From: Epithemia pelagica
Lineage: Eukaryota > Protista > Bacillariophyta
Reading direction: 5' to 3'
NCBI GenBank assembly: GCA_946965045.2
Contig: OX337231.1
Coordinates: 1,488,001 to 1,552,000, forward strand
Length of the DNA: 64,000 nt
In this document: piece after piece, positions 21,801 through 53,126 of the stretch
Numbering within the stretch: position 1 is the first letter of the stretch
Layout: each line of letters opens with the position of its first letter
Position numbers and translations under genes: made by a program
The notes under the pieces: model-generated
What the model saw: only the letters and a program-made list of their open reading frames with translations
The model's database searches: none
What the model was told of the DNA's origin: nothing

Positions 21801-21814
21801 AGGGAGAGGTAGAG
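21801..21814 (+). promoter_or_regulatory. Gypsy polypurine tract
   Basis: AGGGAGAGGTAGAG directly abutting the 3' LTR. Confidence 0.9.
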
Positions 21815-24057: not shown

Positions 24058-24094
24058 AGCACAACTATGTTTGGCTAGGTGTTAGTGACATAGT

Positions 24095-24739: not shown

Positions 24740-25112
24740 AGTTGCTACTCTCACTAGAGGACGTGGGGAGATGTTTCGTGGGTTGGTTCGTTGGGCGTGA
24801 TTCTGACGTGGAACAGCGTGGTGAAATGGTTTTTATTTAATGGATTGATAAAACAATGGATGACCGTTCTTCGATCATTGTTTTTCTTCGGGGCTGAATG
24901 GTTTTGAATAGGGGTTGGCCCGGCGTTTTTTGCCTAACATGGGAAGGTTTTGGAGTAAAGTACTGAATTTCGACTCTTGAGCTAAAAAAGTTTTTTCTAG
25001 TCTTTGATGTTTTTCCACCCCCAGACCCCCTTAGCCTGCCGGCTTACCCGACACGTTCATTCTGAACTCAGTCGAACTAGGCGAGGACTAAATAGGGTAG
25101 CTTGAGAAGAAC

Positions 25113-31100: not shown

Positions 31101-31202
31101 TTCTAAGCTATTCAGTACTTGCAGATAGTTGTTGTTTGTTGCTAAGTAAGTGTTGTTTCCTCTATTGATGCTCATTGGTAACACTGTCGTATCCGCTAAC
31201 AT
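25113..31202 (-). pseudogene. LINE ORF2 (APE endonuclease, RT, RNase H, C-terminal Cys/His), about 2029 codons with two in-frame stops
   Basis: Track ORFs 30945..31202, 27546..30746 and 25113..27515 are one reading frame broken only by TAA (30947-30945) and TGA (27548-27546). Motifs: FANANG, VAETN, GDFN, RIDFIL, GSGQG, FVDD, SDGSA, FRAESYG, CPNC..ENRSHFLRC. Confidence 0.9.
30949..31032. repeat. 18-bp tandem repeat (QATDSI-type) in the ORF2 N-terminus
   Basis: ATGGAATCGGTTGCTTGT x4 plus one 12-bp unit. Confidence 0.88.
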
Positions 31203-33045
31203 CCAGGTTGGATGGATGTAGCGTCATACTCACGTCCGCTGGACCGTGAGTGGCATTTGTCTGTTCCGTGGCCTGAGAACCTTCTGTTGAGGCGGCGGAC
31301 GGTGTTGTTGGTTGTTGCTGGTGATAGGACTGGATAAGGCGCTGTTCGAGAGCTTGAAACCGAGCTTCTGCTGCTGCGTTTACTGCAGAAATGATACGTT
31401 CAATATCAGACATGGGAGTCTGTCCTTGTGGTTGAGGAGGATGTTGAGACCTGGGTTGGGCATATTCTCGAGGAGGAAATTGCCTGTCGCGTTCCTGAAT
31501 AGAAGGGGTATTGTACATATTGGTGGGTGGTTGTCCTTGGGTGTTGGAGCTGTCAGCTTGCTGTTGTTCGCTAGTTTCTTGTCCTTTCGCACGTCGCAGT
31601 TGTTCTCTGAGGTCAGCATTTTCTTTTTCCAGGCGAGCGTTTTCAGCCATCACTCGCTTATCACGATCGTCGTTTGTAGTCAATTGGCTTGGTGTTGTGG
31701 AGGATCGTCTGGTTTCCACAACTTTTGGAACGTTGAGGACAGTCTTCACGTTTGTAGGGCTGATCCAGGCTTGAGTTGCTGCGGATGATCCAGTAGGCGG
31801 CTTTCCTCGAGCATCGTTTGCTTCGTCATCATCGTCTAACATATTCTCTTTTGCATATAAGGAAGCGCATGAGGACAAGTATGTCTCATAAGAGACTTCA
31901 TTTGTATCGTCGTCTTCGGCGATTCGGCGTTTGTGCTTGAATGCGACTCGTGCTGGTTGTGGTAGATTGCCCGGGCTCCTGTTCTCCGTGCTAATGATCT
32001 CTCGTACCCAATCCGCTATGAATTCTTCCAACTTGTTGGCAACGGAATCAAAGTAGGCCTCTGTGGTATGAATGTTCCAACGACCTTTTTCCTCAAGTTT
32101 CTTATGGCGCGAAATTTCTGTAACTCCTTCGATTTGAAAGATTTTTCCTTCGAGATAGAACATAATGTCTTCATTCACACCCTCTATCGGAATCACTTTG
32201 TGATCAGAGAGAAAGTCGTTCTGAGCATAAATTGATTCCAAATAGTAGGTCCTGCTTTCGTCACTTTCGTGTTTAAAACGGTGAAACATGAATTTGGGAT
32301 CCTTCTTGAAAGTTTCATTTAGAAGCCGTAGAATCTCTTTGGCATCTTCTTGTCGGCATTGAAGGCCATATGCCTTTGTTGATCGGTGGCGCTTGCGAAG
32401 GGTATATGTAAATGGCGAGGAGAAATGGATTCGGAACTTCGGGATCTTCTTTTCTGGGCATTTGGTTTCTTTATAGATCTCTTTGATGAGTCTTTCCGTC
32501 ACTTCGCTTTCCATGGTATTGGCAGGATCGATTCCAACGAAAAACCCGATATTCGAAATACGTGTCTCGTCTTCTTTCCAGTGATGAACTAGCATTTTGC
32601 CGTGGTGTTCTTTCAATCTTTGCTCGACAGAATGGTGGCGTCGTATCTGGCTGATCGGAACTCTTGAGTGAATGCGATGAAAGATGAGGTGCAGTGGATC
32701 TCGTTGTTTCTTGTCATTGCCTTTCATGAAGTGCAATTCGTAATTCCTCGCATAATCGTTGTAATTCTTGAGAGTGTTTAGATCTTTCACTTTTCTCCCG
32801 TGGTTGTTGAAAATAGTTATTTCTGGATATACTTGGCGGATAACTTGAAGAACTGAGAAATGGGTTGATGCTACCTTGGTGTTTTCATTCTTGTCGGGGC
32901 GAAAAATAAACTTCACAACGTATTCTTTCTCCTCGCCTTCGTAGTAGACTTTCTTGTTGTCAACATCAGTTGTGTTGCAACTTGCTTCATCCATCTCTTG
33001 GTCTTTGGTGGAAGAATCTCGGGCCTCTACGCCGTCGTCGGCCAT
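31162..33045 (-). CDS. LINE ORF1 protein (627 aa)
   Basis: Long ORF directly upstream of ORF2 and overlapping it by 41 nt, with a coiled-coil and Q/P-rich C-terminus. Confidence 0.82.
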   Translation of the reverse strand: MADDGVEARDSSTKDQEMDEASCNTTDVDNKKVYYEGEEKEYVVKFIFRPDKNENTKVASTHFSVLQVIRQVYPEITIFNNHGRKVKDLNTLKNYNDYARNYELHFMKGNDKKQRDPLHLIFHRIHSRVPISQIRRHHSVEQRLKEHHGKMLVHHWKEDETRISNIGFFVGIDPANTMESEVTERLIKEIYKETKCPEKKIPKFRIHFSSPFTYTLRKRHRSTKAYGLQCRQEDAKEILRLLNETFKKDPKFMFHRFKHESDESRTYYLESIYAQNDFLSDHKVIPIEGVNEDIMFYLEGKIFQIEGVTEISRHKKLEEKGRWNIHTTEAYFDSVANKLEEFIADWVREIISTENRSPGNLPQPARVAFKHKRRIAEDDDTNEVSYETYLSSCASLYAKENMLDDDDEANDARGKPPTGSSAATQAWISPTNVKTVLNVPKVVETRRSSTTPSQLTTNDDRDKRVMAENARLEKENADLREQLRRAKGQETSEQQQADSSNTQGQPPTNMYNTPSIQERDRQFPPREYAQPRSQHPPQPQGQTPMSDIERIISAVNAAAEARFQALEQRLIQSYHQQQPTTPSAASTEGSQATEQTNATHGPADVSMTLHPSNLDVSGYDSVTNEHQ

Positions 33046-33167
33046 GGTGGTCGTAGAGGTGCTCCAGCGGCTACGTAGCGCTCAGTACTGAGTCTACAGA
33101 AATTTCAAATACCAATGACAACTCACTGAGTAACTAGGGCTTTCACTTTTGCCTGATCTCGAAATTG

Positions 33168-38381: not shown

Positions 38382-38987
38382 AGGGCTGGGTAAGCCGATC
38401 CATGTTCGGCTAAGTAGGCTCAGTACATTAATCTACGTAGTACTATTTTCATCAGTGTAACAAGTGGGGCGGATGGTCTCAAATTGAAAACTTGCTGCCA
38501 CGAGAAACAATGCAAATTGGAAGCCATCACTCGACAATGGTGGAAGCCGTCACCCCCATGGCCATAACTTCCTCAATAATTGAGCCTGCCTGAATCACTT
38601 TTACAATAAGAATCTTTACTACTAGAGCAACTTTGCTTTCACTTTGATTCAGGCACCCTTGAAAAATGAATGAGTTAGGGCGGTCGTTCGATTTCATCAC
38701 TGCAGAAAAATGAGCGTACCTTTTCAGCCAACTTGGCAAATCTTCTGTAATTTCAGACAACAATTTCAAAGGTAAAGGCAAAGGACTTACGGTGGTTGGA
38801 TGTTTATGCGATGCATGGGTGAATGCATACGGCGTCACCGGATCTCGCCATCATTGTCGAGCGTTTTTGCATTTTTTTGAAATTCCGACCATTTCCGGCG
38901 TGACGTGTACTATGTGATTTTATGTACTCTACGTAGCTTAATGTACTGAGCCTACTTAGCCGAACATGGATCGGCTTACCCAGCCCT
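38382..38987. mobile_element. 606-bp MITE with TA target duplication
   Basis: About 59-bp TIR (AGGGCTGGGTAAGCCGATCC..., one mismatch), flanked by TA on both sides. Confidence 0.9.
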
Positions 38988-39032
38988 TACTTTCCGTGTG
39001 CAAACTCTTAGAATCCGATCACTAACCCCCTA

Positions 39033-39344
39033 ACTTATCACCGGAACATTGATGCGGGTGAAGGTGCGAGTGCGGGGGGTAAGCCCCCGCACTCGCATCA
39101 ACATTCCTACTAGAAACTTAACAGTTATCCGTAGTTTTGTCATGCGAGTGTGCTTCAACGGATAGAATGACAGACGATTACCGATACTCTTCAGCTTTGG
39201 CGCGGCAAATCGTTGCCCTCGCAGCCCTTGCATGCCCGCAGTGACTTGCACGCAATTTTTGCGAGCGCCCGCGCTAAATTTTTAGATTTGGAGTCCCCCC
39301 TCGCACTCGCACCTGCCCCCGCACCAAAAAGTAGCCTGATAAGT
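39033..39344. mobile_element. 312-bp MITE with TA target duplication
   Basis: Termini ACTTATCA/TGATAAGT, imperfect ~30-bp subterminal inverted repeat, and a perfect 14-bp hairpin (39065-39097). Confidence 0.8.
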
Positions 39345-39540
39345 TACCGTGTAATCCTCATGACTCACCCCCGCTGGGAGCTACGCGGCGATCGCCAAAG
39401 GAGAAAAGCCGGACAGCGAATCAAAAAATGAGGAAGCAAGAACAAGGCATTCCATTCATACAACAGTACTTACCAAAGGTCTCGCTATTCGCACTCAATT
39501 GCTTCGTTCCCATAAACCGCTTCCCAGTATAACCAACACA

Positions 39541-40356: not shown

Positions 40357-41063
40357 AGAGAGAAAGAATCCCCAATGTCATTGTTGGACTACTACAATAG
40401 AGAGATGCATGACTGGAAGATTTGACTCGAGTCGATACACGACGTAGTGGGTGAACTGGGAACAATATGACAACCAAAAGGACTACCTCGTTACGGGATG
40501 GCTAACCGAACTAGTAATGAACATGCTCTACTAGATGCGTATGCGAACCTGTTTGCGTCTCTCAACGGGTGCACCATCAAAAACAATCTCGTTCGACCAT
40601 AGTTGTACAACTACCTACCTAGTAAATGATAGGTAGTCTGAAAGAGAGATGAGGGATGGAGGAAATGTTCATCTCTTTAGCGCTGGATGTCATTTCCGAG
40701 TGTGATACACTCAATCTAGATCCATGACCTGGTGCTCTGCATATTGTTGTTGGCCGTGATTGTGATAGCGATCCGTAAGACGTTGCGTACGGCGTATGGG
40801 GAGACCAACTACAGCTCTGCCGTGGAACATTCCACACAAGTAAGGTGAGAGAAACCTCCAAAAAAATGTAAAAGTCAGCTGATATCCTCGCTCAAGAGGT
40901 TATCTTGGTCCTTTTTTGTCTGTTCTTACGGAACGCCGTTGTCTCATCCTCCGTCATGGTGATCTGTAGGACGAGAGAGATTTTGTGGGAACACGGGGCT
41001 TAGCTGGCGTGCCCACTCGTCCCGAAATCCGACATCCACCGCCGGCACAACATGATTCGTGTA

Positions 41064-43667
41064 TATATCCATCTTCAGATTTAAGCCCCCATTTAGCAAA
41101 ATAAAGGCTTCTTGCCGATAAGCCCTATGTCACAGTACGATAATTAGTAGAGGAGACTTGTCCACTCACTTTCACCTCCCACCAACACACACACCAACAA
41201 CCGACACAACACACAAGCAAGAGAGCACAACCCACAACCCACACAACATGAACAACATCACAGAGTGATCCAGTCTTTAGGCTTGCACGACCTATTTTTG
41301 GCGTTCACAACAGAATCACATCGTCGCGCGGCGTTGTCTGTATGGAAAATAAGAGTGAAAGCCGGTGGACCGTCCATGTGCCACTCACCGACAAACGCAA
41401 GCTAACGCCTCTGAAAAATTTTGTGACCGGAAGCAGCAAGAAGTGTGCGTTCAACAAGAGAATGCTCCAGGGGATCGAGGCATCCATCTAGGTAGAACTC
41501 CCTGACGCACAGAAGAACAACCATGACAACTATGAATGAAACCTTTGCGACTCATCACCACCATCGAACTCGAATGGTGGTGGTGGAAAATGTCACAAAG
41601 CCAAGCACTCCTGGAGACTTGGTGTCCCGACACCAACGAGGGGCGTTGTTTACGGCTCGTGTCGCCAAACAGTCACAACCAACAACAACCACAACAACAA
41701 CTAACACGACAACGACTACCATGCCCAACCCAGCCACTACCTTTCAACCCGTCGAGCCGGAAGGAGTGGACGACGATGACTTTGCGTTGGAAGACTTGGA
41801 AGAAGCCAGTCAAATGCATGTAGACTCCTTTGATGAACATGAATTGAATTACCATGACGAGTACGAAGATCACAACGAAGAGAACAACACTAATATTCGA
41901 ATTACGGTAAGCACCGGGGATGACAAGGTGCAAGTTGTCTCGGATAGTAGTGAGAGAAATGAAAATGACTACCACGACGACGATGAGGAGCAATATCACG
42001 AGGAGAGTCCTAGCCATACGGTGGACCCGGATCTGTCTTATGGATCGCGAACTGGGATGGAGACTCCTCCAGTTCCTCAACGTCCAACCATGGTACAATC
42101 GCAAAGTCCAGTGCTTTCCGAATCGGGAGGTTCGTCCGCCTTTACCCCCACCAAAGCACATAGTTTGTCACCCTATCCACGCGTCCCCGTTCCAGCTGGA
42201 ACAGGAGGAGGAGGACGCATTGGACCACCACCCAGTCCTCCCTCGCCCAGTGCTCGAATTGTGCAACAAATGGCCACCGCCGGTACTGCGGGAGAAACCA
42301 TCCTTACCCCTGTAGCAACCAAGCCTCCTCGACCTGGAGTCGCCCAAAGTACCACAAGTAATCCTTCGACTCAACCACCACACACCACCATCATGTCCAC
42401 TACCACCATGTCCACTACCACCACACCCCCTGGAATCCCCAAAGCTCGAATTACTGTTCAAACATCAACCCCTCGCTATACAAGGAATCCACCCCCAGTA
42501 TCTCCTTCCTCTTCCACACGACCGATTGCAGCCACTCCGGTAGCATCGAATCTCGGCGAACTCTTGGGAGCTTCAGTGGCGCAACTCGGCAAGGGTCATC
42601 ATCATCATCATCCTCCGCCCACCTTGGACGACACTCCTGTCGTTTCCAATAGTCGCAAAGCGTTGGTTACGCCGGATTCCTCTCCGGCGCGAGATACTTC
42701 GTTAGTAGACAATGAACAGCATGAAACCGATTCGGATTGGTCCAAATCGGCCGTGGATCAAATGACCAACGCGGTCGACGCTTTGGCCCGGATTGGACAT
42801 TCCTTTCTTCAAGGACCCGTGCCTGCCAACCATCCTGCTCCGGCCTCTCAACAATCATTGTCGACGCCAGGGCATGCCCCCGAACCATTACAAGAGTCCA
42901 CGCAGCCGTCCCCAACGCCCCTTCATCCTCCCACGATACAGCATCCACAAGGACATTTCCATCCTCCCTTGCATCAGTACACACCCGCACTCCACCCGAA
43001 TCCGTCCACAGATGCAGCACCCGGACAGGCGCCCTTGCAGTCCCATCCGAACAACCACAACAGCAGCAACAACAACAACATGTCGGCACTTCCCCCTCGA
43101 GGTCCGCCGTCTCAAACGGGTATGGTTGGTCAACCTGTGATGGGAGGACCACCCGTTCCTCCTCAACGTCCTCCTCCGGAAGGTAGTGCTACCGAAAGTG
43201 CCTTGTCCGATGCCCTGGATAAAATGAATTTGGATGACCGATCCAGTGAACTGGAGGATCAGCAATCCTCGGGTCCTCAAAACGGTTTTTTGCTACAGTC
43301 GTCCTTGTTGCAAAACAGCGCCTTTCAGCAGCAACAGCAACATCTTCACCCTTCCATTCAACAACAACAACAACAACCGGGCGATGGAGATACCCGATCC
43401 GCCTACGGTCTCAGTCAGTCGCAAACCGGAACGGAACACATTTCCAATCAACGATTGCCACGACCGACTTCGGCACAGATTGCCGCGAGCTATGGATCAC
43501 GGGGACCCGCCGAATCGAACAAGAACAAGTCTGCCCAGCACTACAAAAAGCCAGGAAAAGGTCAAGACATTACGCCCATGATGAGGATGCGGAACAAGGA
43601 CCTAGTAACCAATGATCATCAAAGTGTCAATTCCAACGACGTGATATCACGAAGTCAGAGCCTCGTT
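41064..43667 (+). repeat. Segmental duplication copy A (promoter + first 715 codons of the 49833 gene)
   Basis: Aligns with 49372-51971 with at least ten substitutions and four indels (+2, +3, -15, +6). Confidence 0.95.
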
Positions 43668-46600
43668 AACCCTGGAGCCACGGGCCGTACTTCACGTCAT
43701 GGCACGAGTACGGTACCGACGGGAGGAAGTGACCCGCCCGGAGGTACACCGGGAACGGGAGGAAGCGCGGCAGGGATGGCCGCAGGAGGAACGGCTCCAG
43801 GAGTAGCTGCGCCAGGGGGCGCGTCTGGAACGGGCACTGCAGGTGCAGGTGCCGCAGGAACAGGAGGCGCCGGCGGCATCGCCGGTGCAGGTGGAGGAGT
43901 GCCAGGAGCAGCTGGGGCGGGAGGACCTGGCGCCCCTGGCGGAGGAGGTGCTGGAGGGCATGGTGCAGGTGGAGGAGGCGACGGCGGAGGCGCTGGAGGA
44001 GGAGGCGCTGGAGGAGGAGGCGGAGGTGGAGTACCTCCAGGCGTGCCACCACCACCACCGCCACTTTCTGCAGTCGGAATGGCCCTATCCGTGTGTGGCG
44101 CGAATCCTTTCGAGATATATGCCTTGGAACACACGGAACGGCTTAATACTCTAGAGTCATACGGAAGGATGACATCGGATGACGTGACCCAGGTAGCGTC
44201 GCGATTGGAGAAACGTCCTTACCCGCATAACGTCGCCATCCCTACAAGTGTCGTCAAGAACATTCAAGGAATGTGTTTCTGGTCGGCACGGGCGCGTCGA
44301 CAGGGTTGTCCGCTTAACTATGGAGATTTCACCACGGAAGTCTTGGCAGAATCGTTGGACGCCATGGAAATTCAGGCAGAAAAATCCTCCGCACCAGATA
44401 TTAAGCCCTCCGCCCTCAAGGAAGAAGACTGGGAAGATTGGAGTCAAGAATTCCCCACGTATCTGTCTCACATATACGGAAAACAGAAGGCCCCATTGGA
44501 TTATGTGATCCGTCCGGACCTAGCTCCGACTCACGTTTTTGCTAGTACTAGGGAACAAGAGCTCTATAGCTACCCTCTAGGTGGCCCCTACTACGAGGAA
44601 GATAACAAGGAGGTATTTCGGCTGTTGAGTGATCTAGTGAAAGATCAACCTGCCACTTGGATCCAGCCGTACCAGGCATCTCAAGATGGACGCCGTGCAT
44701 GGCTTGCACTCGTGGATCATTTCGATGGCGGCGGTCAAAAGGAACGGCGTATCTCCAAGGCCGAGGCCATCCTAGAGACGGTCTTATATCAAAACGAACG
44801 CGTCTTTAGTTTTGATGCTTACTCTGCTAAACTTTTGCGGGCGTTTCGTACCCTGGACAATACCCCTAATCGGCGCACGGCATCGAACCAAGTCAAGATT
44901 CTCATTGACAACATGAAGATTGCAACGGCTGAGTTCGCTGTCATCAAAGCGTACGTTCGAAGCAACCATCGCACGGACTTACCAGGGGCCATTGCGTATA
45001 TCTCACGCGAAATATCGGATATCTATCCGGACGTCGCCGTTGGCGGTAATCGACGTAACCAAGGCCGTCACCGCTTCATATCGGAAACCACCTCGAACCC
45101 CGCCAACCGTCCACGGAACTTTACTGGACTCCAGCAAACCAACGGAATCTACACCTTCTACGGTGTTGATGTCACCGACGTCACTCGTCGTTTTTCAAGC
45201 GAAGAAATGGCGACCCTTGGCCCTGCTGGGCAAGCTTATATTCACCAGGAACGCGCACGGGTTCGTGTTCATGGTGGTCGTGGCGGCGGCCGCGGTCTCG
45301 GTGGTCGGGGACGTCATGGACATGGGGGTCGCGGTGCAGGCCGTGGTCGTGGCATTTCTGAGATCCAGACTGGTGGGGACCAGTCAATTATTACCGATAT
45401 CACCAACAACGATCAGGACACAAGGACGGAAACTGGCACAGCCACACAAGGGGAACGAGAAAGGGGAAGTACAAACGGGAGAAGATTTGGGAATGGGGCA
45501 TACGGAGATGAAAATACTGGGACAGCAGGAAGCACTGGGAATGGCCATCGGGGAATGGCGGTCGTCCATTGCGGGCCACAGCGACGCGTTGGTCAAGTCG
45601 CCAAGGGTTGGTTGTTGGAACAAGGAAAAGCGGGAACTCTTGGTAGGAACGAAATGGACACGATGGCGGATACATGTTGCGCGGGGCGCAATTGGACTCT
45701 GCTTGAGACAACGGGGATGGAGTGTACCGTTAACGATTTTGCAGGCAACCAGGTGGGAAAATCTTCGGTGCCAGTGGCGACATGTGCCACTGTCGTCAGG
45801 GAGGCGAAATCTGGCTTAGAAATCGTAGTGATAGGACACCAAATGTTGTGGTTCGGGGATAAGTTGGATAAAACATTGTTGAATCAAAACCAGATTCGCC
45901 ATGCTGGGCACGATGTTGGGGACGACCCGACGAGAAAGGATCGTGAAGGATTCGGAATTTGGGTGGATGGGTTTCACATCCCGTTTCAGTTACACGGAAC
46001 GACGGTGTACTTTGAGTCCCGAGCACCAAGTCCTCAAGACATCGAACAGATGCCTTCTGTTACTGTTACACGTCAAGAAATGTGGGATCCCCACACGGTT
46101 GACCTGTTAGTCCAGGACGCAAGCCCATATCTGGAAACGTATGGACCGAGCGTGGCCGGGATTGGGGAGATTTCTGTCGCCTTGACCCCGGAAGGAATTA
46201 CACGCGAGTTGGCCTCTCGTCCGCGAGTTAAACAAGTCGAGAGCTCGCGGCATGGCTCGGCCACTGCGGAGAGTCTCAGTCGCAAGTGGCGCATCGGGCT
46301 CGATTCCGCTCGAAATACCCTCCGAGTGACCACCCAACAGGGGATCCGCACGGCTATCTCGCCAATCACGCGGCGATACAGGGTAGACAATCTAGCATTA
46401 CACCGGAATCGCCTCCACACACGCTTTCATACGGACACACTGTTCTCCAAGACGACGTCTTTGTCCGGAAACAAGTGTGCTCAGTTGTTTACGGACGGAC
46501 ACTTTACCGCGGTTTACCCTCTACCTAGTAAGGCACAAGTCGGACAGGCGCTCGCGCAATTTATCGACGAAGTTGGGATCCCGGACAAGCTCACCGCGGA

Positions 46601-49148
46601 TATGGCGGGTGAGCAGTTTGGAGAATCCACCCTATTCCGGAAGTTAGTCCGGATGCACCGTGTGGACATCCACTGGACGGAACGTCACACTGGAAAGCAA
46701 AATCATCGCGCCGAGCGCGAAATTGGATTGTTGAAGCAACGATGGCACCGTCGTGCCACTGACTTGCATGTGCCCAAGCGACTGTGGGATTTTGGCCTCG
46801 TTTATGAAGCGGGCATACTCAGTCGAGTCGCTCGGGGACAAGACGGCCGAACTGGGTTGGAACGACTCTCGGGAGATACGCCCGACATCTCGGAGTGGAT
46901 TGATTTTTCTTTTTTTGACTTAGTTTGGTTTCACAACAACGTGAAAACTGATACCGCTGACGACAATGCTCAATTGGGATACTGGTTGGGAATCGCTCAC
47001 CGAATTGGCAGCGATCTCTGCTATTGGGTGCTGACCAAAAGCGGCAAGGTCATCGCTCGGACAACAGTCCAGCACGTCACAGACGACGATATGCGGAAGC
47101 CAGAAATCGCCGAGAAGGTTAAGCAGTTCAAGTTGATTGTTGAAGAGAGGTTAGATGACCGGAACTTCACTGACACGGAAGGGAAAGGACCAGGTTACTT
47201 GGAGGACATGGAGAATTTGGAGTTAGAAGAGGAAAGACGGGGACGGACCGGGATCGTCCCGTCTGATGAGGAATACGGAGATATGGTGGTGGAGGAAACA
47301 AAGGATGCTGACGCACATGGGGAAGGACACGACGAGTACATTGGGGCACAGATACAAGTCGAAGTGGGAGGCGAGCGAATGTTCGGCACGGTAGTGAAAA
47401 GACAGAAAGGGTTAGACGGGAAGCCTGTGGGAAAACCGCACCGCAACCCACGATTTGACACCAGGACTTACCAAGTAGGATTCCCAGGTGGAGTAATACA
47501 GGAATACACGGCGAACCTGGTGGCGGAGAACTTGTATTCTCAACTGGATACTGAAGGGAAAAGGTTTCTGGTGATCCAAGAGGTAGTCGGTCACAGGAAA
47601 AACGGGGACGCCGTGAGGGTTGAGGATGGGTACCATGAAGGCAAGAATGGTAACAAACACCCGAAGAGAACAACCAAGGGATGGGAAATAGCTGTCGAAT
47701 GCCGCGATGGGAAACAGATGTGGATACCTCTACGGGACGCAAAAAATGGGTACGCCATCGAGTTGGCAGAATACGCGGTCGCACAAGGGCTCGTGGAGGA
47801 ACCGGCATTCAAGTGGTGGGTCCCACAGACGCTCAACCACATGCGCCGGATGGTAAAGAAGGTGAAGAAAAAATACTGGAAGACCACCGAGAAGTATGGG
47901 ATAAAACTACCCCATTCGGTGGAAGAAGCTTTAAAGATAGACAAACTAACTGGAACTACGTTCTGGAGGGACGCTATCGACAAGGAACTCAAGGTAGTGA
48001 AGGTAGCATGGGAAGCACGGGACGACTTAGACATCGACGAGATCGACCGGCATTACAAGATCAAGGCAGGCAGCGTGGGTGAGCCGACTGTATATTTGGG
48101 CGCGCAGATTTACAAGCACAACTTACCTAGTGGTGACTGGGCATGGGGAATGTCCAGTGAAAAGTATGTGTCCAATGCCATTCGGATCGTCGAAGACCTG
48201 CTGAAGGAGGACGGGGACGGCAAACATTTGAAGACCACGGCACGGGTCCCCGTCATCTCATCGTACAAGCCTGAACTGGATACCAGCCCAGAGCTAGACG
48301 CAAGACTCACCTCACGATATCAACAGCTGATTGGGATTCTCAGGTGGGCAGTGGAGCTCGGTCGTGTGGACGTCTATTTGGAGGTCTCGATCTTGTCGCA
48401 GTTCTTAGCGAATCCAAGGGAAGGGCATCTCGAAGCGGTGTATCACATATTCGCCTTCCTCAAAACACATCCCAAGCTGAAGTTGGTGTTCGATCCAAAA
48501 GATGTGGTGCTGGATGAATCTTGTTTCCCGCAGGTTCCATTGGACGAATGGAAAGAGTTTTATGGGGATGTTGCTGAAGAGGTTCCGTCCGATATGCCGC
48601 TGGCGTTAGGACGGCCCGTAACTATCACGTGTTTCGTTGATGCCGATCACGCCGGGAACATCGTGACTCGTCGATCGCACACCGGGATCTTAATCTTCCT
48701 CCAAAATGCTCCCATCCTGTGGTACTCGAAGAGGCAAAATACCGTGGAGACTTCAAGTTTTGGGAGCGAGTTCGTTGCTCTTCGGATCGCCAAGGAGATG
48801 ATTGTTGCATTGCGTTACAAACTTCGGATGTTCGGGGTTCCTTTGGCCGGGCCAGCCAATGTCCTCTGCGACAATCGTGGTGTGGTGAAGAACACCAGTC
48901 TGCCTTCTTCGGTTCTCAGCAAGCGGCATAACGCTATCAATTATCATGCGGTGCGGGAGGCGGCTGCAGCGTCGATTATCCGCGTCGGTAAGGAAGATAC
49001 CGAATCCAATATTGCAGACTTGTTTACCAAGGTCCTGCCACAGGAGCGGCGGAACAACTTGATTTCGCAGTTTACGTATTCTTCGGCTTTTGGGTCCAGT
49101 GGTCCACCTTCTATGTCCACTGCTGGTATCAATCCATCCGCCCTCTGA
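41523..49148 (+). CDS. Chimeric ORF (2541 aa): host N-terminus (715 aa) fused in frame to Copia Gag-PR-IN-(RT-deleted)-RNaseH
   Basis: Identical to the 49833 protein up to SRSQSLV, then a Gly/Ala-rich region, Gag, EMDTMADT (protease), FHTDTLF/ADMAGEQ/AEREIG (integrase) and FVDADHAG/SEFVA/ADLFTK (RNase H). No YVDD. Confidence 0.88.
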   Translation: MTTMNETFATHHHHRTRMVVVENVTKPSTPGDLVSRHQRGALFTARVAKQSQPTTTTTTTNTTTTTMPNPATTFQPVEPEGVDDDDFALEDLEEASQMHVDSFDEHELNYHDEYEDHNEENNTNIRITVSTGDDKVQVVSDSSERNENDYHDDDEEQYHEESPSHTVDPDLSYGSRTGMETPPVPQRPTMVQSQSPVLSESGGSSAFTPTKAHSLSPYPRVPVPAGTGGGGRIGPPPSPPSPSARIVQQMATAGTAGETILTPVATKPPRPGVAQSTTSNPSTQPPHTTIMSTTTMSTTTTPPGIPKARITVQTSTPRYTRNPPPVSPSSSTRPIAATPVASNLGELLGASVAQLGKGHHHHHPPPTLDDTPVVSNSRKALVTPDSSPARDTSLVDNEQHETDSDWSKSAVDQMTNAVDALARIGHSFLQGPVPANHPAPASQQSLSTPGHAPEPLQESTQPSPTPLHPPTIQHPQGHFHPPLHQYTPALHPNPSTDAAPGQAPLQSHPNNHNSSNNNNMSALPPRGPPSQTGMVGQPVMGGPPVPPQRPPPEGSATESALSDALDKMNLDDRSSELEDQQSSGPQNGFLLQSSLLQNSAFQQQQQHLHPSIQQQQQQPGDGDTRSAYGLSQSQTGTEHISNQRLPRPTSAQIAASYGSRGPAESNKNKSAQHYKKPGKGQDITPMMRMRNKDLVTNDHQSVNSNDVISRSQSLVNPGATGRTSRHGTSTVPTGGSDPPGGTPGTGGSAAGMAAGGTAPGVAAPGGASGTGTAGAGAAGTGGAGGIAGAGGGVPGAAGAGGPGAPGGGGAGGHGAGGGGDGGGAGGGGAGGGGGGGVPPGVPPPPPPLSAVGMALSVCGANPFEIYALEHTERLNTLESYGRMTSDDVTQVASRLEKRPYPHNVAIPTSVVKNIQGMCFWSARARRQGCPLNYGDFTTEVLAESLDAMEIQAEKSSAPDIKPSALKEEDWEDWSQEFPTYLSHIYGKQKAPLDYVIRPDLAPTHVFASTREQELYSYPLGGPYYEEDNKEVFRLLSDLVKDQPATWIQPYQASQDGRRAWLALVDHFDGGGQKERRISKAEAILETVLYQNERVFSFDAYSAKLLRAFRTLDNTPNRRTASNQVKILIDNMKIATAEFAVIKAYVRSNHRTDLPGAIAYISREISDIYPDVAVGGNRRNQGRHRFISETTSNPANRPRNFTGLQQTNGIYTFYGVDVTDVTRRFSSEEMATLGPAGQAYIHQERARVRVHGGRGGGRGLGGRGRHGHGGRGAGRGRGISEIQTGGDQSIITDITNNDQDTRTETGTATQGERERGSTNGRRFGNGAYGDENTGTAGSTGNGHRGMAVVHCGPQRRVGQVAKGWLLEQGKAGTLGRNEMDTMADTCCAGRNWTLLETTGMECTVNDFAGNQVGKSSVPVATCATVVREAKSGLEIVVIGHQMLWFGDKLDKTLLNQNQIRHAGHDVGDDPTRKDREGFGIWVDGFHIPFQLHGTTVYFESRAPSPQDIEQMPSVTVTRQEMWDPHTVDLLVQDASPYLETYGPSVAGIGEISVALTPEGITRELASRPRVKQVESSRHGSATAESLSRKWRIGLDSARNTLRVTTQQGIRTAISPITRRYRVDNLALHRNRLHTRFHTDTLFSKTTSLSGNKCAQLFTDGHFTAVYPLPSKAQVGQALAQFIDEVGIPDKLTADMAGEQFGESTLFRKLVRMHRVDIHWTERHTGKQNHRAEREIGLLKQRWHRRATDLHVPKRLWDFGLVYEAGILSRVARGQDGRTGLERLSGDTPDISEWIDFSFFDLVWFHNNVKTDTADDNAQLGYWLGIAHRIGSDLCYWVLTKSGKVIARTTVQHVTDDDMRKPEIAEKVKQFKLIVEERLDDRNFTDTEGKGPGYLEDMENLELEEERRGRTGIVPSDEEYGDMVVEETKDADAHGEGHDEYIGAQIQVEVGGERMFGTVVKRQKGLDGKPVGKPHRNPRFDTRTYQVGFPGGVIQEYTANLVAENLYSQLDTEGKRFLVIQEVVGHRKNGDAVRVEDGYHEGKNGNKHPKRTTKGWEIAVECRDGKQMWIPLRDAKNGYAIELAEYAVAQGLVEEPAFKWWVPQTLNHMRRMVKKVKKKYWKTTEKYGIKLPHSVEEALKIDKLTGTTFWRDAIDKELKVVKVAWEARDDLDIDEIDRHYKIKAGSVGEPTVYLGAQIYKHNLPSGDWAWGMSSEKYVSNAIRIVEDLLKEDGDGKHLKTTARVPVISSYKPELDTSPELDARLTSRYQQLIGILRWAVELGRVDVYLEVSILSQFLANPREGHLEAVYHIFAFLKTHPKLKLVFDPKDVVLDESCFPQVPLDEWKEFYGDVAEEVPSDMPLALGRPVTITCFVDADHAGNIVTRRSHTGILIFLQNAPILWYSKRQNTVETSSFGSEFVALRIAKEMIVALRYKLRMFGVPLAGPANVLCDNRGVVKNTSLPSSVLSKRHNAINYHAVREAAAASIIRVGKEDTESNIADLFTKVLPQERRNNLISQFTYSSAFGSSGPPSMSTAGINPSAL

Positions 49149-49371
49149 GGGAGCCAGTCATCACTTCCATGGCATGTTGACTGGCGGGGACTGTCTCATT
49201 CTGGTCGATACGGGATTGATACGTCAGCATGACGTAGATTGGGCCTTATGACCGGGGGAAATTTGTACGGACATTATCGGTTACCACTTTACTGGTTTTA
49301 TGCGTTGGATGTAGTTGTAACGCTTATCTTAGTCTTTCTTTGGAACGGATTCTATCAGGTAGAATAAGACA
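43668..49371 (+). mobile_element. CoDi-type Ty1/Copia, 5'-truncated, RT core deleted, single 3' LTR
   Basis: PR-IN-RT-RH order, PPT CCGGGGGAAATT followed by TG at 49264. No second LTR or PBS found in the window. Confidence 0.9.
49264..49371 (+). repeat. Putative Copia 3' LTR (108 bp)
   Basis: TGTACGG...AAGACA, directly after the PPT and ending exactly where the host duplication starts. Confidence 0.7.
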
Positions 49372-51971
49372 TATATCCATCTTCAGATCTAAGCCCCCAT
49401 ATAGCACAAAATAAAGGCTTCTTGCCGATAAGCCCTATGTCACAGTACGATAATTAGTAGAGGAGACTTGTCCACTCACTTTCACCTCCCACCAACACAC
49501 ACACCAACAACCGACACAACACAGAAGCAAGAGAGCACAACCCACAACCCACACAACATGAACAACATCACAGAGTGATCCAGTCTTTCGGCTTGCACGA
49601 CCTATTTTTGGCGTTCACAACAGAATCACATCGTCGCGCGGCGTTGTCTGTATGGAAAATAAGAGTGAAAGCCGGTGGACCGTCCATGTGCCACTCACCG
49701 ACAAACGCAAGCTAACGCCTCTGAAAAATTTTGTGACCGGAAGCAGCAAGAAGTGTGCGTTCAACAAGAGAATGCTCCAGGGGATCGAGGCATCCATCTA
49801 GGTAGAACTCCCTGACGCACAGAAGAACAACCATGACAACTATGAATGAAACCTTTGCGACTCATCACCACCATCGAACTCGAATGGTGGTGGTGGAAAA
49901 TGTCACAAAGCCAAGCACTCCTGGAGACTTGTTGGTGTCCCGACACCAACGAGGGGCGTTGTTTACGGCTCGTGTCGCCAAACAGTCACAACCAACAACA
50001 ACCACAACAACAACCAACACGACAACGACCACCATGCCCAACCCAGCCACTACCTTTCAACCCGTCGAGCCGGAAGGAGTGGACGACGATGACTTTGCGT
50101 TGGAAGACTTGGAAGAAGCCAGTCAAATGCATGTAGACTCCTTTGATGAACATGAACTGAATTACCATGACGAGTACGAAGATCACAACGAAGAGAACAA
50201 CACTAATATTCGAATTACGGTAAGCACCGGGGATGACAAGGTGCAAGTTGTCTCGGATAGTAGTGAGAGAAATGAAAATGACTACCACGACGACGATGAG
50301 GAGCAATATCACGAGGAGAGTCCTAGCCATACGGTGGACCCGGATCTGTCTTATGGATCGCGAACTGGGATGGAGACTCCTCCAGTTCCTCAACGTCCAA
50401 CCATGGTACAATCGCAAAGTCCAGTGCTTTCCGAATCGGGAGGTTCGTCCGCCTTTACCCCCACCAAAGCACATAGTTTGTCACCCTATACACGCGTCCC
50501 CGTTCCAGCTGGAACAGGAGGAGGAGGACGCATTGGACCACCACCCAGTCCTCCCTCTCCCAGTGCTCGAATTGTGCAACAAATGGCCACCGCCGGTACT
50601 GCGGGAGAAACCATCCTTACCCCTGTAGCAACCAAGCCTCCTCGACCTGGAGTCGCCCAAAGTACCACAAGTAATCCTTCGACTCAACCACCACACACCA
50701 CCATCATGTCCACTACCACCACACCCCCTGGAATCCCCAAAGCTCGAATTACTGTTCAAACATCAACCCCTCGCTATACAAGGAATCCACCCCCAGTATC
50801 TCCTTCCTCTTCCACACGACCGATTGCAGCCACTCCGGTAGCATCGAATCTCGGCGAACTCTTGGGAGCTTCAGTGGCGCAACTCGGCAAGGGTCATCAT
50901 CATCATCATCCTCCGCCCACCTTGGACGACACTCCTGTCGTTTCCAATAGTCGCAAAGCGTTGGTAACGCCGGATTCCTCTCCGGCGCGAGATACTTCGT
51001 TAGTAGACAATGAACAGCATGAAACCGATTCGGATTGGTCCAAATCGGCCGTGGATCAAATGACCAACGCGGTCGACGCTTTGGCCCGGATTGGACATTC
51101 CTTTCTTCAAGGACCCGTGCCTGCCAACCATCCTGCTCCGGCCTCTCAACAATCATTGTCGACGCCAGGGCATGCCCCCGAACCATTACAAGAGTCCACG
51201 CAGCCGTCCCCAACGCCCCTTCATCCTCCCACGATACAGCATCCACAAGGACATTTCCATCCTCCCTTGCATCAGTACACACCCGCACTCCACCCGAATC
51301 CGTCCACAGATGCAGCACCCGGACAGGCGCCCTTGCAGTCCCATCCGAACAACCACAACAGCAGCAACAACAACAACATGTCGGCACTTCCCCCTCGAGG
51401 TCCGCCGTCTCAAACGGGTATGGTTGGTCAACCTGTGATGGGAGGACCACCCGTTCCTCCTCAACGTCCTCCTCCGGAAGGTAGTGCTACCGAAAGTGCC
51501 TTGTCCGATGCCCTGGATAAAATGAATTTGGATGACCGATCCAGTGAACTGGAGGATCAGCAATCCTCGGGTCCTCAAAACGGTTTTTTGCTACAGTCGT
51601 CCTTGTTGCAAAACAGCGCCTTTCAGCAGCAACAGCAACATCTTCACCCTTCCATTCAACAACAACAACAACAACAACAACCGGGCGATGGAGATACCCG
51701 ATCCGCCTACGGTCTCAGTCAGTCGCAAACCGGAACGGAACACATTTCCAATCAACGATTGCCACGACCGACTTCGGCACAGATTGCCGCGAGCTATGGA
51801 TCACGGGGACCCGCCGAATCGAACAAGAACAAGTCTGCCCAGCACTACAAAAAGCCAGGAAAAGGTCAAGACATTACGCCCATGATGAGGATGCGGAACA
51901 AGGACCTAGTAACCAATGATCATCAAAGTGTCAATTCCAACGACGTGATATCACGAAGTCAGAGCCTCGTT
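49372..51971 (+). repeat. Segmental duplication copy A'
   Basis: Near-identical to 41064-43667 and continues into the intact gene. Confidence 0.95.
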
Positions 51972-53126
51972 TCGCAGAGTGTTCAATCCCAGAGTATTCA
52001 ATCGCACAGCGTGCAATCGTACAAAAGTGCAGCCTCGCAAATGACAGAAGAAGAGTTCCATGCCATGAAGCAACGCAAGTGGCGAGAAAAAAAGAAACTC
52101 GCGGATGAAACACGTGCTCGCGAAAAAGAGCGATTGGAGGGGACACGCAAAAAGAAGAGCAGGGGCCGAGCAAAGCGAAAAAGACTCGACGTGGAAGGTA
52201 TCACCAATCTTGGCGCCTGCCAGTCAGGGCTGCAGAATATATTGAGCAATATCCTGGAGGGATCCTGTGGCCAAATGGAAGAAGATGGATCAGACTCTGA
52301 AGATGACGAAGAAAGTACCATTGGAGAGAGCACCCAGGCCTCAGAAGACTACACTCGTGGTTCCTCCATCCAATCATCCCGAAATCCTCCGGACAGTCCA
52401 TCTCGAATGTCGTCGAAAATATCGAATGCGTATACCGAAGAGGAGTCGTTAGAACAACAAGACGCAACAACGGATGGTGGCACGATTACGACGGACGGAA
52501 GCAGGACGGAGGATTCGGGCGGAAATGACAACCACTCGGAAGACCAGCAAAGTGTCCCACACCACAAGATCGACATGGAAAAGTTCAAGGACAAGGCATT
52601 TATCAAGAAATTCACTTCGGATATTTCGTCAAAAGGGATACGTTTCTTTTACCACAAGGCAAACAACGGTACTTTGGCAAACCCAGCTCGTGTAATGGTA
52701 CGGCTGAACCTTGGGCGTCAAGACTCGAATGGCAAGTTCAGTGAACCTCATTTGATGGTCAGCTCGGAAGGGGGCGAATTTGAGTTGATATTTGATATTT
52801 TCGACATTCGAAGTCTCGAAAAGGCGTCGGCCATGAAGTTAAAGGCTTACCCGCTTTCTCTTCCGGGCAACAGTATATTAATTCGTCTGAGCGAGGGTGA
52901 TCATGTACTGGAAGCTCCAGATGAAGAAGCAGCAGCCCGATTTGTGCATGGGATGCGCTGGTTGATTGCACGCCTCTCCTTCAATCTGATTATCGGGAAT
53001 GCTTCGGTAAGCTGTGAATTGCTCGAATCCGTCGAAGCGCCGCCTGACGAAATGCAAGAAGAACGAGCGATGAACGATGTGTCCAATTTTTTGGCCGACA
53101 AGACAACGCAGTTTGTCTCCATTTAG
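49833..53126 (+). CDS. Host protein with a long disordered Pro/Ser/Thr/Gln N-terminus and a C-terminal PH-like domain (1097 aa)
   Basis: Uninterrupted ORF. The C-terminal FDIFDIRSLEK...VLEAPDEEAAARFVHGMRWL pattern resembles a PH-fold beta-sandwich plus helix. Confidence 0.8.
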   Translation: MTTMNETFATHHHHRTRMVVVENVTKPSTPGDLLVSRHQRGALFTARVAKQSQPTTTTTTTNTTTTTMPNPATTFQPVEPEGVDDDDFALEDLEEASQMHVDSFDEHELNYHDEYEDHNEENNTNIRITVSTGDDKVQVVSDSSERNENDYHDDDEEQYHEESPSHTVDPDLSYGSRTGMETPPVPQRPTMVQSQSPVLSESGGSSAFTPTKAHSLSPYTRVPVPAGTGGGGRIGPPPSPPSPSARIVQQMATAGTAGETILTPVATKPPRPGVAQSTTSNPSTQPPHTTIMSTTTTPPGIPKARITVQTSTPRYTRNPPPVSPSSSTRPIAATPVASNLGELLGASVAQLGKGHHHHHPPPTLDDTPVVSNSRKALVTPDSSPARDTSLVDNEQHETDSDWSKSAVDQMTNAVDALARIGHSFLQGPVPANHPAPASQQSLSTPGHAPEPLQESTQPSPTPLHPPTIQHPQGHFHPPLHQYTPALHPNPSTDAAPGQAPLQSHPNNHNSSNNNNMSALPPRGPPSQTGMVGQPVMGGPPVPPQRPPPEGSATESALSDALDKMNLDDRSSELEDQQSSGPQNGFLLQSSLLQNSAFQQQQQHLHPSIQQQQQQQQPGDGDTRSAYGLSQSQTGTEHISNQRLPRPTSAQIAASYGSRGPAESNKNKSAQHYKKPGKGQDITPMMRMRNKDLVTNDHQSVNSNDVISRSQSLVSQSVQSQSIQSHSVQSYKSAASQMTEEEFHAMKQRKWREKKKLADETRAREKERLEGTRKKKSRGRAKRKRLDVEGITNLGACQSGLQNILSNILEGSCGQMEEDGSDSEDDEESTIGESTQASEDYTRGSSIQSSRNPPDSPSRMSSKISNAYTEEESLEQQDATTDGGTITTDGSRTEDSGGNDNHSEDQQSVPHHKIDMEKFKDKAFIKKFTSDISSKGIRFFYHKANNGTLANPARVMVRLNLGRQDSNGKFSEPHLMVSSEGGEFELIFDIFDIRSLEKASAMKLKAYPLSLPGNSILIRLSEGDHVLEAPDEEAAARFVHGMRWLIARLSFNLIIGNASVSCELLESVEAPPDEMQEERAMNDVSNFLADKTTQFVSI

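What the first reader, a model, noticed from the sequence alone, without database searches (positions are those of the whole stretch)
41064..53126. Host gene 5' half fused in frame to a one-LTR Copia, inside a 2.6-kb duplication that preserves the intact gene
Seen: the layout is [A 41064-43667][Copia from gag to 3' LTR 43668-49371][A' 49372-51971][rest of gene]. A carries the promoter and 715 codons, which read without a stop into Gag-PR-IN-RNaseH (2541 aa). There is no 5' LTR or PBS, so the host promoter would drive the retroelement proteins while A' keeps the original gene. A and A' differ by at least ten substitutions and four indels, which looks like allelic divergence rather than a fresh target duplication. 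Inference: either an illegitimate crossover joined an empty allele (in the gene) to a Copia-bearing allele (in gag), or one-ended integration made a giant duplication. Either would be a host-retroelement chimeric gene caught at birth.
Basis: partly seen in the sequence, partly recalled or inferred. Interest (0 to 1): 0.86.

Follow-up and report, generated by a model that had tools for sequence, protein, structure and literature searches.

The report
Copia-bridged gene duplication, one haplotype
On one of its two chromosome copies, a diatom carries a real rearrangement in which a crippled Copia retrotransposon sits between two copies of the front half of a gene. This creates a weakly transcribed gene–retroelement fusion reading frame, the intact gene stays in use, and there is no sign yet that the fusion does anything.

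Summary
A (41064-43667) and A' (49372-51971) are 98.6% identical and flank a Ty1/Copia remnant (43668-49371). The remnant lacks the 5' LTR, the PBS, the first 35 gag codons and 537 bp (179 codons, in frame) of the RT core. The host ORF runs in frame into gag-pol (2541 aa), and the intact 1097-aa gene follows.

It is not a haplotype mis-join.
- A second deposited assembly holds the same structure.
- That assembly also holds the other haplotype, which has one gene copy, no Copia and both junction sites empty.
- A, A' and the hap2 allele are three different sequences.
- An independent run that behaves like RNA-seq has a 929-nt contig identical to the window across the left junction. Its depth is about 4% of the normal A'-to-gene continuation, and it stops 0.9 kb into gag.

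A and A' differ as functional alleles do: 5 synonymous to 1 non-synonymous change, all coding indels in frame, and 0.38% divergence against 0.40% between the haplotypes. This fits an end-joining exchange between an empty and a Copia-bearing homologue, or a cDNA-bridged repair.

The variant is heterozygous but was not formed from the two present haplotypes. Function is unproven and unlikely. The result is a clean example of a known class, not a new system.

The parts
41064..43667 (+). A: first copy of the duplicated host segment. It holds 459 bp of native upstream DNA (41064-41522) plus codons 1-715 of the host gene (41523-43667). It sits in the native upstream context (PRA1 gene, then intergenic DNA).
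   Evidence: Self-blastn and alignment. The segment has only two copies in the genome. Three-way comparison with hap2 gives 5 substitutions and 4 indels private to A.
41523..49148 (+). Chimeric ORF of 2541 aa: host residues 1-715 (disordered N-terminal half) joined in frame to Gag (from codon 36), PR, IN, RT remnant and RNase H.
   Evidence: The same ORF was called on ENA contig ctg1256l.
43667..43668 (+). Left junction: host codon 715 joined to gag codon 36. The join is blunt, without microhomology, and lies on a codon boundary.
   Evidence: It is unique in the genome. Run X3 carries it in a 929-nt contig (43638-44566, 0 differences, depth 27.1), against depth 678.9 for the branch that continues into the normal gene.
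43668..49371 (+). Ty1/Copia (diatom CoDi-like) remnant. Landmarks: gag from codon 36; protease motif near 45654; integrase core near 46428; RT remnant 47961-48100; RNase H motif near 48639; stop at 49146-49148. It has no 5' LTR, no PBS and no RT core.
   Evidence: 98.6-98.7% identical to copies on C8 and C4. RVT_2 is found in the sibling. The integrase call rests on language-model features (gag_pre-integrs, rve, SH3_retrovirus clusters scoring 0.90-0.95). Pfam and PDB sequence searches on the window copy found nothing. The window copy has 35 private substitutions, 21 synonymous and 12 non-synonymous.
48033..48041 (+). Joint of the 537-bp (179-codon) in-frame deletion of the RT core. The 9-bp repeat ATCGACGAG is present once here and twice, flanking the 537 bp, in the other copies.
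   Evidence: The joint is unique in the genome. DNA-run contigs at this place run on into undeleted RT from the other copies.
49192..49371 (+). 3' LTR (180 bp, TG..CA), preceded by a purine-rich tract. It ends at the natural terminus and abuts A'.
49372..51971 (+). A': second copy of the duplicated segment. It is continuous with the rest of the gene and retains 461 bp of native upstream DNA behind the LTR.
49833..53126 (+). Intact host gene (1097 aa): disordered N-terminal half, a Lys-rich helical stretch and a C-terminal PH-like domain. It is conserved in raphid diatoms.
   Evidence: Homologues. 51% identity over the full length to the Epithemia clementina protein. AF2 model with pLDDT 76.7, and Foldseek hits to ISP1 and PH domains at E about 1e-4.

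Best explanation
**What it is.** This is a real, haplotype-specific (heterozygous) structural variant in a diploid diatom. The organism is most likely Epithemia pelagica; that identification is an inference.

**Layout.** On haplotype 1, an immobile and doubly defective Ty1/Copia copy lies between two copies of a 2.6-kb host segment. The Copia copy is 5'-truncated in gag and has lost its RT core. The host segment is the promoter-proximal 460 bp plus 715 codons of a conserved gene encoding a PH-like-domain protein. Haplotype 2 has the simple single-copy gene.

**Most likely origin (inferred).** The event had two steps in an ancestor.
1. An ordinary Copia integration occurred 460 bp upstream of the ATG on one homologue. 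This explains the exact LTR terminus at the right junction.
2. Non-homologous end joining then linked an empty homologue broken after codon 715 to the filled homologue broken at gag codon 36.

This yields U-A-(truncated Copia)-A'-R, with A and A' derived from different alleles.

**Consequences.**
- The fusion is in frame by chance (1 in 3).
- The copy with the full native upstream region now reads into gag-pol.
- Its RNA is rare and was seen only over the first 0.9 kb of gag.
- A' carries on the gene's normal function.
- The fusion is most likely a neutral or slightly deleterious by-product, not a working gene.
For: **Structure (shown)**
- Coordinates and junctions are as described.
- A second assembly run (ENA ERZ21939226 ctg1256l) has the same structure. 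It is identical to the window over 31523-57739, with a 1-nt indel at 57740.
- The same assembly holds hap2 (ctg1254l). There PRA1 is followed directly by one 1097-aa gene, with no Copia, and the sequence is continuous across both junction sites.
- There are three distinct alleles. Private changes: hap2 18 substitutions and 2 indels; A 5 substitutions and 4 indels; A' 4 substitutions.
- The hap2 variants 43523, 43544 and 43553 are the minority contig type in runs X1-X3. At 43553 their share of depth is 85/215 in X1, 57/180 in X2 and 243/711 in X3, giving 1.5:1 to 2.2:1 in favour of the A/A' type. That is nearer the 2:1 expected for two copies against one than 1:1.
- The X3 contig 43638-44566 carries the junction and the window copy's private letters at 44117, 44193, 44307, 44372 and 44501.

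**Allelic origin (inferred)**
- The A/A' coding differences are 5 synonymous to 1 non-synonymous (p = 0.004 against neutrality), and all coding indels are in frame.
- A/A' divergence is 0.38%, against 0.40-0.41% between the haplotypes in the flanks.

**Background from the literature**
- Heterozygous LTR-retrotransposon insertions, 4-5-bp target-site duplications and TE-associated rearrangements are described in diatoms (PMC2806351).
- Frequent mitotic interhomologue recombination is described in diatoms (bioRxiv 10.1101/2020.11.08.373134).
Against: - No allele with a full-length Copia at 41063/41064 has been seen, so step 1 is only inferred.
- X3's kind is not on record. I take it for RNA because it has zero depth over the promoter and most of the Copia, and high depth over the CDS.
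- In DNA runs X1, X2 and X4, every listed contig carries the letters of the other Copia copies at the window copy's private sites. No listed contig carried the left junction, and the output (156 pieces unlisted) does not settle the right one. Contigs drop minority variants, so absence is not shown, but DNA-read confirmation is missing.
- The second assembly probably comes from the same HiFi reads, so it is not fully independent.
- Contig depth is a poor measure of copy number and of expression.
Confidence: 0.6

Rival explanations
1. One-step cDNA-bridged repair, or one-ended integration. A defective linear Copia cDNA, with its left end incomplete and its RT core lost by template switching at the 9-bp repeat, joined with its natural LTR end at 41063/41064 on one chromatid or homologue. 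The join was made by integrase or by end joining. The truncated end was ligated by NHEJ to a break after codon 715 on the other, creating the 2.6-kb duplication in a single event.
For: - The right end is the exact LTR terminus, while the left end is internal and blunt without microhomology. That is the usual form of captured Ty1 cDNA fragments at breaks in yeast (background: PMC11372161 listed, abstract only read; otherwise own knowledge).
- The RT deletion between 9-bp repeats is unique to this copy, as expected for a reverse-transcription template switch.
- No full-length insertion at this site is known. Hap2 is empty.
Against: - It needs two chromosomal ends plus a cDNA in one repair event.
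- If sister chromatids were used, A and A' would start identical, and the selection-filtered, allele-like differences would need later gene conversion.
- With homologues it predicts the same product as the two-step model, so present data cannot separate the two.
Confidence: 0.28
2. Assembly artefact. A and A' are allelic or mixed-strain sequences wrongly chained through a Copia copy, and no chromosome carries A-Copia-A'.
For: - A and A' differ at about the same level as the haplotypes do.
- The listed contigs of DNA runs X1, X2 and X4 show neither the left junction nor the window copy's private Copia letters.
- Both assemblies probably derive from the same reads.
Against: - Both junctions are non-homologous, and assemblers do not invent such joins.
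- Three different alleles exist in one haplotype-resolved assembly, and the third is a clean empty site.
- The left junction and the private Copia letters are present in a separate 2024 run.
- Two assembly runs agree.
- The 35 private substitutions across the element give long reads an unambiguous path between the two junctions.
Confidence: 0.05
3. A functional new gene. The fusion is maintained because a host-promoter-driven, N-terminally extended Gag (with or without PR and IN) either restricts this Copia family, as truncated Gag does for Ty1, or supplies proteins in trans to copies with broken ORFs.
For: - The 2541-aa frame is fully open, whereas the two nearest siblings each carry one premature in-frame stop.
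- Both the fusion and the RT deletion are in frame.
- A's private coding changes are 3 synonymous, 0 non-synonymous and 3 in-frame indels.
- A junction transcript exists.
Against: - The variant is heterozygous, and hap2 lacks it.
- The transcript runs at about 4% of the depth of the A'-to-gene continuation and is not seen beyond 44566.
- Two in-frame events together have a chance probability of about 1 in 9, which is not remarkable.
- The synonymous bias is equally explained by an allelic origin before the fusion.
- The indels lie in codon-based repeats, which are in frame by nature.
Confidence: 0.05

Closest known systems
Haplotype-specific CoDi (diatom Ty1/Copia) insertions and TE-associated rearrangements in Phaeodactylum tricornutum (Maumus et al. 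2009, PMC2806351)
   Same: A diatom Copia-type element present on one haplotype only, with an intact empty allele on the other. LTRs are short, and the flanking repeat is 4-5 bp (ACAA in the sibling on C4). Rearranged loci occur next to elements.
   Different: The rearrangements described there are homologous exchanges between elements, or simple insertions. Here the left join is non-homologous and lies inside gag. The element bridges a 2.6-kb duplication of host DNA and creates an in-frame host-Gag-Pol ORF. Assignment of this element to a particular CoDi group was not tested.
Capture of Ty1 cDNA fragments at chromosomal breaks in yeast (own knowledge: Moore and Haber 1996; Teng et al. 1996; Yu and Gabriel 1999; recent work PMC11372161)
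   Same: A truncated retroelement copy without a normal target-site duplication, joined by end joining with little or no microhomology. One end can be the natural cDNA end.
   Different: Yeast captures are mostly short fragments at a single break. Here 5.7 kb sits between two copies of a 2.6-kb host segment, which needs ends from two chromatids or homologues. Involvement of cDNA is not shown.
Host-transposon fusion genes such as SETMAR and other transposase-capture genes, and the maize Bs1 retrotransposon with transduced host gene fragments (own knowledge)
   Same: A single reading frame combines host-gene and transposable-element coding sequence and is transcribed from one promoter.
   Different: Those fusions are fixed, conserved, usually made by splicing or transduction, and have tested or inferred functions. 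This one is a DNA-level join, heterozygous, weakly transcribed and without evidence of a protein.
Tandem duplications with inserted DNA at the breakpoint (templated or filler insertions; own knowledge)
   Same: The layout is head-to-tail copies of a segment with foreign DNA exactly at the joint, and no bases are lost at either side.
   Different: Filler DNA is normally tens to hundreds of bases. Here it is a nearly whole retrotransposon that ends at its natural LTR terminus.

Membership tests
Ty1/Copia LTR retrotransposon | Reverse transcriptase of the RVT_2 (PF07727) type | tested here: met
   Met in the 98.7%-identical sibling on C8 (E 1.7e-19). In the window copy the core itself is deleted (537 bp), and Pfam finds nothing there. 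The window copy is therefore a defective member by descent.
Ty1/Copia LTR retrotransposon | Domain order PR-IN-RT-RNase H (integrase before RT) | tested here: inconclusive
   The stretch upstream of the RT remnant resembles Copia-type integrase clusters by language-model features (gag_pre-integrs, rve, SH3_retrovirus; scores 0.90-0.95). Pfam and PDB sequence searches found no hit. The RNase H motif (DADHAGN...) downstream was read by eye.
Ty1/Copia LTR retrotransposon | Two LTRs (TG..CA) with a short target-site duplication, plus PBS and PPT | tested here: not met
   The window copy has only the 3' LTR (49192-49371) and a purine tract. It has no 5' LTR, no PBS and no short TSD. The full-length sibling L015 has 191-bp LTRs that are 100% identical, with ACAA on both flanks. 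The window copy is a truncated, immobile remnant.
Established (domesticated) host-transposon fusion gene | One uninterrupted frame across the join, transcribed across it | tested here: met
   The ORF is 2541 aa. The X3 contig crosses 43667/43668 at depth 27.1, against 678.9 for the normal continuation, and reaches only to 44566. X3's RNA nature is inferred.
Established (domesticated) host-transposon fusion gene | Fixed in the species and conserved under selection | tested here: not met
   The other haplotype of the same sample lacks it. The E. clementina orthologue is a plain full-length gene.
Integrase-made (giant) target duplication / non-concerted integration | Both ends of the insert are LTR termini joined to the duplicated target | tested here: not met
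   The right end is the LTR terminus. The left end is gag codon 36, 143 bp inside the element.
Haplotype mis-join (assembly artefact) | Only two sequence types exist for the segment in a diploid, and the junctions are absent from other libraries | tested here: not met
   Three types exist: A, A' and hap2. The hap2 type is seen in reads at about one third of the depth, and the left junction is present in run X3.

The most novel reading that the evidence does not exclude
The fusion is an incipient functional gene. In this reading a host promoter expresses an N-terminally extended, RT-less Gag(-PR-IN) that either interferes with particle assembly of the young Copia subfamily or complements copies whose own frames are broken. 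The first would be a diatom counterpart of Ty1 copy-number control by truncated Gag, or of Fv1-type restriction. The duplication would then preserve the parental gene while the new function is tried out.
Probability: 0.05. Interest if true: 0.8.

Novelty: new variant of a known kind. Interest (0 to 1): 0.5.

Why it matters
This is a fully resolved example of how a retrotransposon can create both a gene duplication and a host-retroelement fusion frame. The filled allele and the empty allele are available in the same individual. That makes the birth step of host-TE chimeric genes, usually seen only long after fixation, open to direct experiment in a culturable diatom. It also adds a non-homologous, element-bridged duplication to the TE-driven haplotype differences known in diatoms. 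Within this 64-kb window the two haplotypes differ by three insertion-type variants. As it stands the case is a single heterozygous mutation with weak transcription and no shown function, so its value is as an example rather than as a new mechanism.

Tried and rejected
- **Pfam on the chimeric ORF.** Searching the whole ORF and its pieces gave no family. The element is too divergent and its RT core is gone. RVT_2 was recovered only from the sibling.
- **PDB sequence search of the integrase stretch.** Nothing found.
- **Methylation idea.** I considered that A's private C-to-T changes reflect methylation spreading from the element. None of them is in a CpG context, so I rejected it.
- **Simple tandem duplication of a Copia-bearing chromosome.** Rejected, because it would leave a full element upstream of A, whereas the U-A boundary is an intact empty site.
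- **A or A' as a retrocopy.** Rejected, because the segment includes 460 bp of promoter DNA that has zero depth in the RNA-like run.
- **An exchange between the two present haplotypes.** Rejected, because neither A nor A' equals hap2.
- **Genomic-DNA contamination as the source of the X3 junction contig.** Rejected, because the multi-copy Copia interior has zero depth in X3.
- **DNA-run contigs (X1, X2, X4).** They could neither confirm nor exclude the junctions, because Logan contigs follow the majority Copia letters. The read tools' caps (one call each) prevented a second look at A's private sites and at the right junction.
- **Earlier-findings search.** A word search for similar fusions in this genome returned nothing.
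Full report
**1. Observation**

A self-comparison of 38-56 kb gives one long direct repeat: 41063-43667 against 49371-51971, at 98.6% identity with 10 mismatches and 4 gaps. Base 41063/49371 is an A that is also the last base of the LTR.

The segment occurs only twice in the 60.5-Mb, 23-contig genome. ORFs 41523-49148 (2541 aa) and 49833-53126 (1097 aa) are present. The four indels are 2 bp upstream of the ATG, and 3, 15 and 6 bp in the coding part. All three coding indels are in frame and lie in codon-based repeats.

**2. The element**

The 5.7 kb between the repeats matches many places in the genome.

- Two copies, on C8 and at 50 kb on C4, are 98.6-98.7% identical to it. A rearranged copy on C13 is about 94-96% identical, and further copies are 65-79% identical.
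- The C4 copy is full length. Its LTRs are 191 bp, 100% identical, TG..CA, with ACAA on both flanks. Its gag ATG lies 38 nt past the 5' LTR.
- Against the C4 copy, the window copy begins 143 bp after the 5' LTR, at gag codon 36 and exactly on a codon boundary. There is no microhomology to the host sequence at that join. The copy ends at the natural LTR terminus (3' LTR 49192-49371).
- The window copy also lacks 537 bp (179 codons) between two copies of the 9-bp repeat ATCGACGAG. In the C8 sibling this stretch is the Pfam RVT_2 core (E 1.7e-19).
- Pfam and PDB sequence searches see nothing else in this divergent element. Language-model features place the PR-IN stretch among Copia-type integrase clusters, several of them from diatoms.
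- The left junction and the RT-deletion joint are unique in the genome.
- Each of the two nearest siblings has one premature in-frame stop. The window copy has none.
- Of the window copy's 35 private substitutions, 21 are synonymous and 12 are not. Most of its divergence therefore arose while its lineage was still under selection as an element, not after it was immobilised.

**3. Host gene and organism**

The 1097-aa protein has full-length homologues in raphid diatoms. The best is Epithemia clementina, at 51% identity over the whole length and 69% over the C-terminal third.

A paper on Epithemia genomes describes a 60-Mbp chromosome-level E. pelagica assembly from the Sanger Institute (PMC11383321). 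That fits this genome, but the identification is an inference.

Conserved columns are concentrated in the C-terminal third, with a few short conserved motifs in the N-terminal half. That third holds a Lys-rich helical stretch and a domain that folds as a PH-like barrel (AF2 pLDDT 76.7; Foldseek hits to Toxoplasma ISP1 and classical PH domains at E about 1e-4). The break after residue 715 removes both. The fusion keeps only the largely disordered N-terminal half.

**4. Is the structure real?**

Four lines of evidence bear on this.

(a) A second deposited assembly (ENA ERZ21939226, contig ctg1256l, 338,611 bp) has the same two ORFs in the same order. It is identical to the window from 31523 to 57739, with a 1-nt indel at 57740. 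It is therefore a separate assembly run, though probably from the same reads.

(b) The 90% cluster of the host protein had a second 1097-aa member. It lies on contig ctg1254l of the same assembly, which is the other haplotype. There the PRA1 gene is followed directly by a single copy of the gene, with no Copia, and the sequence is continuous across both junction sites.

(c) A, A' and the hap2 allele are three different sequences. Private changes are:

| Allele | Substitutions | Indels |
|---|---|---|
| hap2 | 18 | 2 |
| A | 5 | 4 |
| A' | 4 | 0 |

A diploid cannot hold three alleles of a single-copy segment, so one haplotype must carry two copies.

The hap2 variants at 43523, 43544 and 43553 are exactly the minority contig type in the public runs. 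At 43553 the figures are as follows.

| Run | hap2-type depth at 43553 | All depth at 43553 | A/A' type : hap2 type |
|---|---|---|---|
| X1 | 84.8 | 214.8 | 1.5 : 1 |
| X2 | 56.6 | 179.5 | 2.2 : 1 |
| X3 | 243.3 | 711.4 | 1.9 : 1 |

These ratios are nearer the 2:1 expected for two copies against one than 1:1. The tool warns that contig depth is a poor measure, so this evidence is weak.

(d) Run X3 (2024, a different sample of the same study) contains a 929-nt contig covering 43638-44566 with no differences from the window. It includes the junction and the window copy's private letters at 44117, 44193, 44307, 44372 and 44501.

Caveats on (d) and on the DNA runs:
- The X3 contig has 30 letters, not 31, on the host side. 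That is the k-1 overlap of a de Bruijn unitig. The junction-spanning 31-mers must be in the reads, but the tool's own bridging criterion is missed by one letter.
- In X1, X2 and X4, all listed contigs follow the other copies' letters at the private sites, and no listed contig carried the left junction. The output lists only some contigs (156 pieces unlisted) and does not settle the right junction.
- Logan contigs drop minority variants, so this shows neither presence nor absence.
- All four runs belong to one study.

**5. Transcription**

X3 behaves like RNA-seq. It has zero depth over the promoter part of A' (49372-49519) and over nearly all of the multi-copy Copia, and high depth over host coding sequence. 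Its kind is not on record, so this is an inference.

At the branch point, the continuation into the normal gene has depth 678.9 and the continuation into gag has 27.1, about 4%. The normal continuation is A'-specific, because it carries T at 43667 where hap2 has C. The gag contig ends at 44566, and nothing is seen over PR, IN or RNase H.

So the chimeric RNA exists, is rare, and is not shown to be full length. There is also no read-out from the 3' LTR into A'. The copy with the complete native upstream region (A) yields far less stable RNA than A', which keeps only 461 bp of native upstream DNA behind the LTR. RNA instability or silencing of the element-containing transcript would explain this, but neither was tested.

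**6. History**

Coding differences between A and A' are 5 synonymous to 1 non-synonymous (516 synonymous against 1629 non-synonymous sites; p = 0.004). Overall A/A' divergence is 0.38%. That equals the divergence between the two haplotypes in the flanks, 0.40-0.41%.

Relative to hap2 the copies are mosaic. Apart from hap2's own 11-bp deletion (41211-41221), A' differs from hap2 at only one site (41279) in the first 0.8 kb, where A differs from hap2 by 5 substitutions and 2 indels. A and A' are nearly identical in the remaining 1.8 kb, where hap2 differs by 16 substitutions.

The simplest reading is that A and A' come from two different, functional alleles of a recombining population. Neither of them is the present hap2. 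The event is therefore young, since the variant is heterozygous and the frame is open. It was not formed between this individual's two haplotypes.

**7. Mechanism**

A plain tandem duplication of a Copia-bearing chromosome is excluded, because the U-A boundary is an empty site. Two models remain, and both give the same product.

- **Preferred model (about 0.6).** An ordinary integration occurred 460 bp upstream of the ATG on one homologue. An end-joining exchange followed, with an empty homologue broken after codon 715. This uses only known processes: heterozygous insertions and TE-linked rearrangements in diatoms (PMC2806351) and frequent mitotic interhomologue interaction (10.1101/2020.11.08.373134). 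It directly predicts allele-level A/A' divergence and the exact LTR end.
- **Alternative model (about 0.3).** A one-step repair was bridged by a defective linear cDNA. This is supported by the natural right end, the blunt internal left end and the unique template-switch-like RT deletion.

Only population data, meaning the presence or absence of the full-length intermediate allele, can separate the two.

**8. Verdict**

- The artefact hypothesis is unlikely (about 0.05).
- In kind, this is a haplotype-specific, TE-associated structural variant, which is known in diatoms. Its layout is unusual and well resolved: an element-bridged duplication that gives an in-frame host-Gag-Pol ORF.
- A function for the fusion is not supported (about 0.05). 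It would be interesting if shown.

**9. Seen in passing**

Within this window the empty haplotype also lacks 16211-33164, a 17-kb insertion flanked by a short repeat, and 38382-39351, a stack of small elements. Haplotype 1 therefore carries three insertion-type variants in 64 kb.

Noticed in passing
window 16211-33164 versus L020 2589-2607: The other haplotype (ENA ctg1254l) lacks this ~17-kb stretch entirely. Its two flanks overlap by 19 bp in hap2. The insertion noted by another first-stage finding is therefore heterozygous, and the empty site is available.
   Followed up: partly
window 38382-39351 versus L020 7805-7839: The other haplotype lacks this ~1-kb stretch, which holds the stack of small inverted-repeat elements noted by another finding. 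About 33 bp of other sequence sits in its place.
   Followed up: no
L015 (G000:C4:47500-56500) and L016 (G000:C8:446000-455000): Each of the two nearest full-size siblings of the Copia carries a single premature in-frame stop, at codon 1279 and codon 1843. This is so even though the C4 copy has 100% identical LTRs. The C8 copy has no LTR next to its PBS, and a 98% LTR match lies about 8 kb further out (C8:461180-461362). No copy of this young subfamily in the haploid assembly encodes a complete Gag-Pol.
   Followed up: partly
L017 (G000:C13:2603000-2612500): A fourth copy, 94-96% identical, is 5'-truncated at a different point (it aligns from window 44999). It also contains an internal 125-bp tandem duplication (4358-4482 and 4498-4622).
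   Followed up: no
window 49833-53126: The host protein family has no Pfam domain in any homologue. Its C-terminal 130 residues nonetheless fold as a PH-like domain closest to the Toxoplasma ISP1/ISP3 proteins of the inner membrane complex. The family appears to be an unannotated, diatom-wide PH-domain family.
   Followed up: partly
window 57740: A single-base length difference between the chromosome-level assembly and ENA contig ctg1256l. It is the only difference in 26 kb and is probably an assembly or polishing difference.
   Followed up: no
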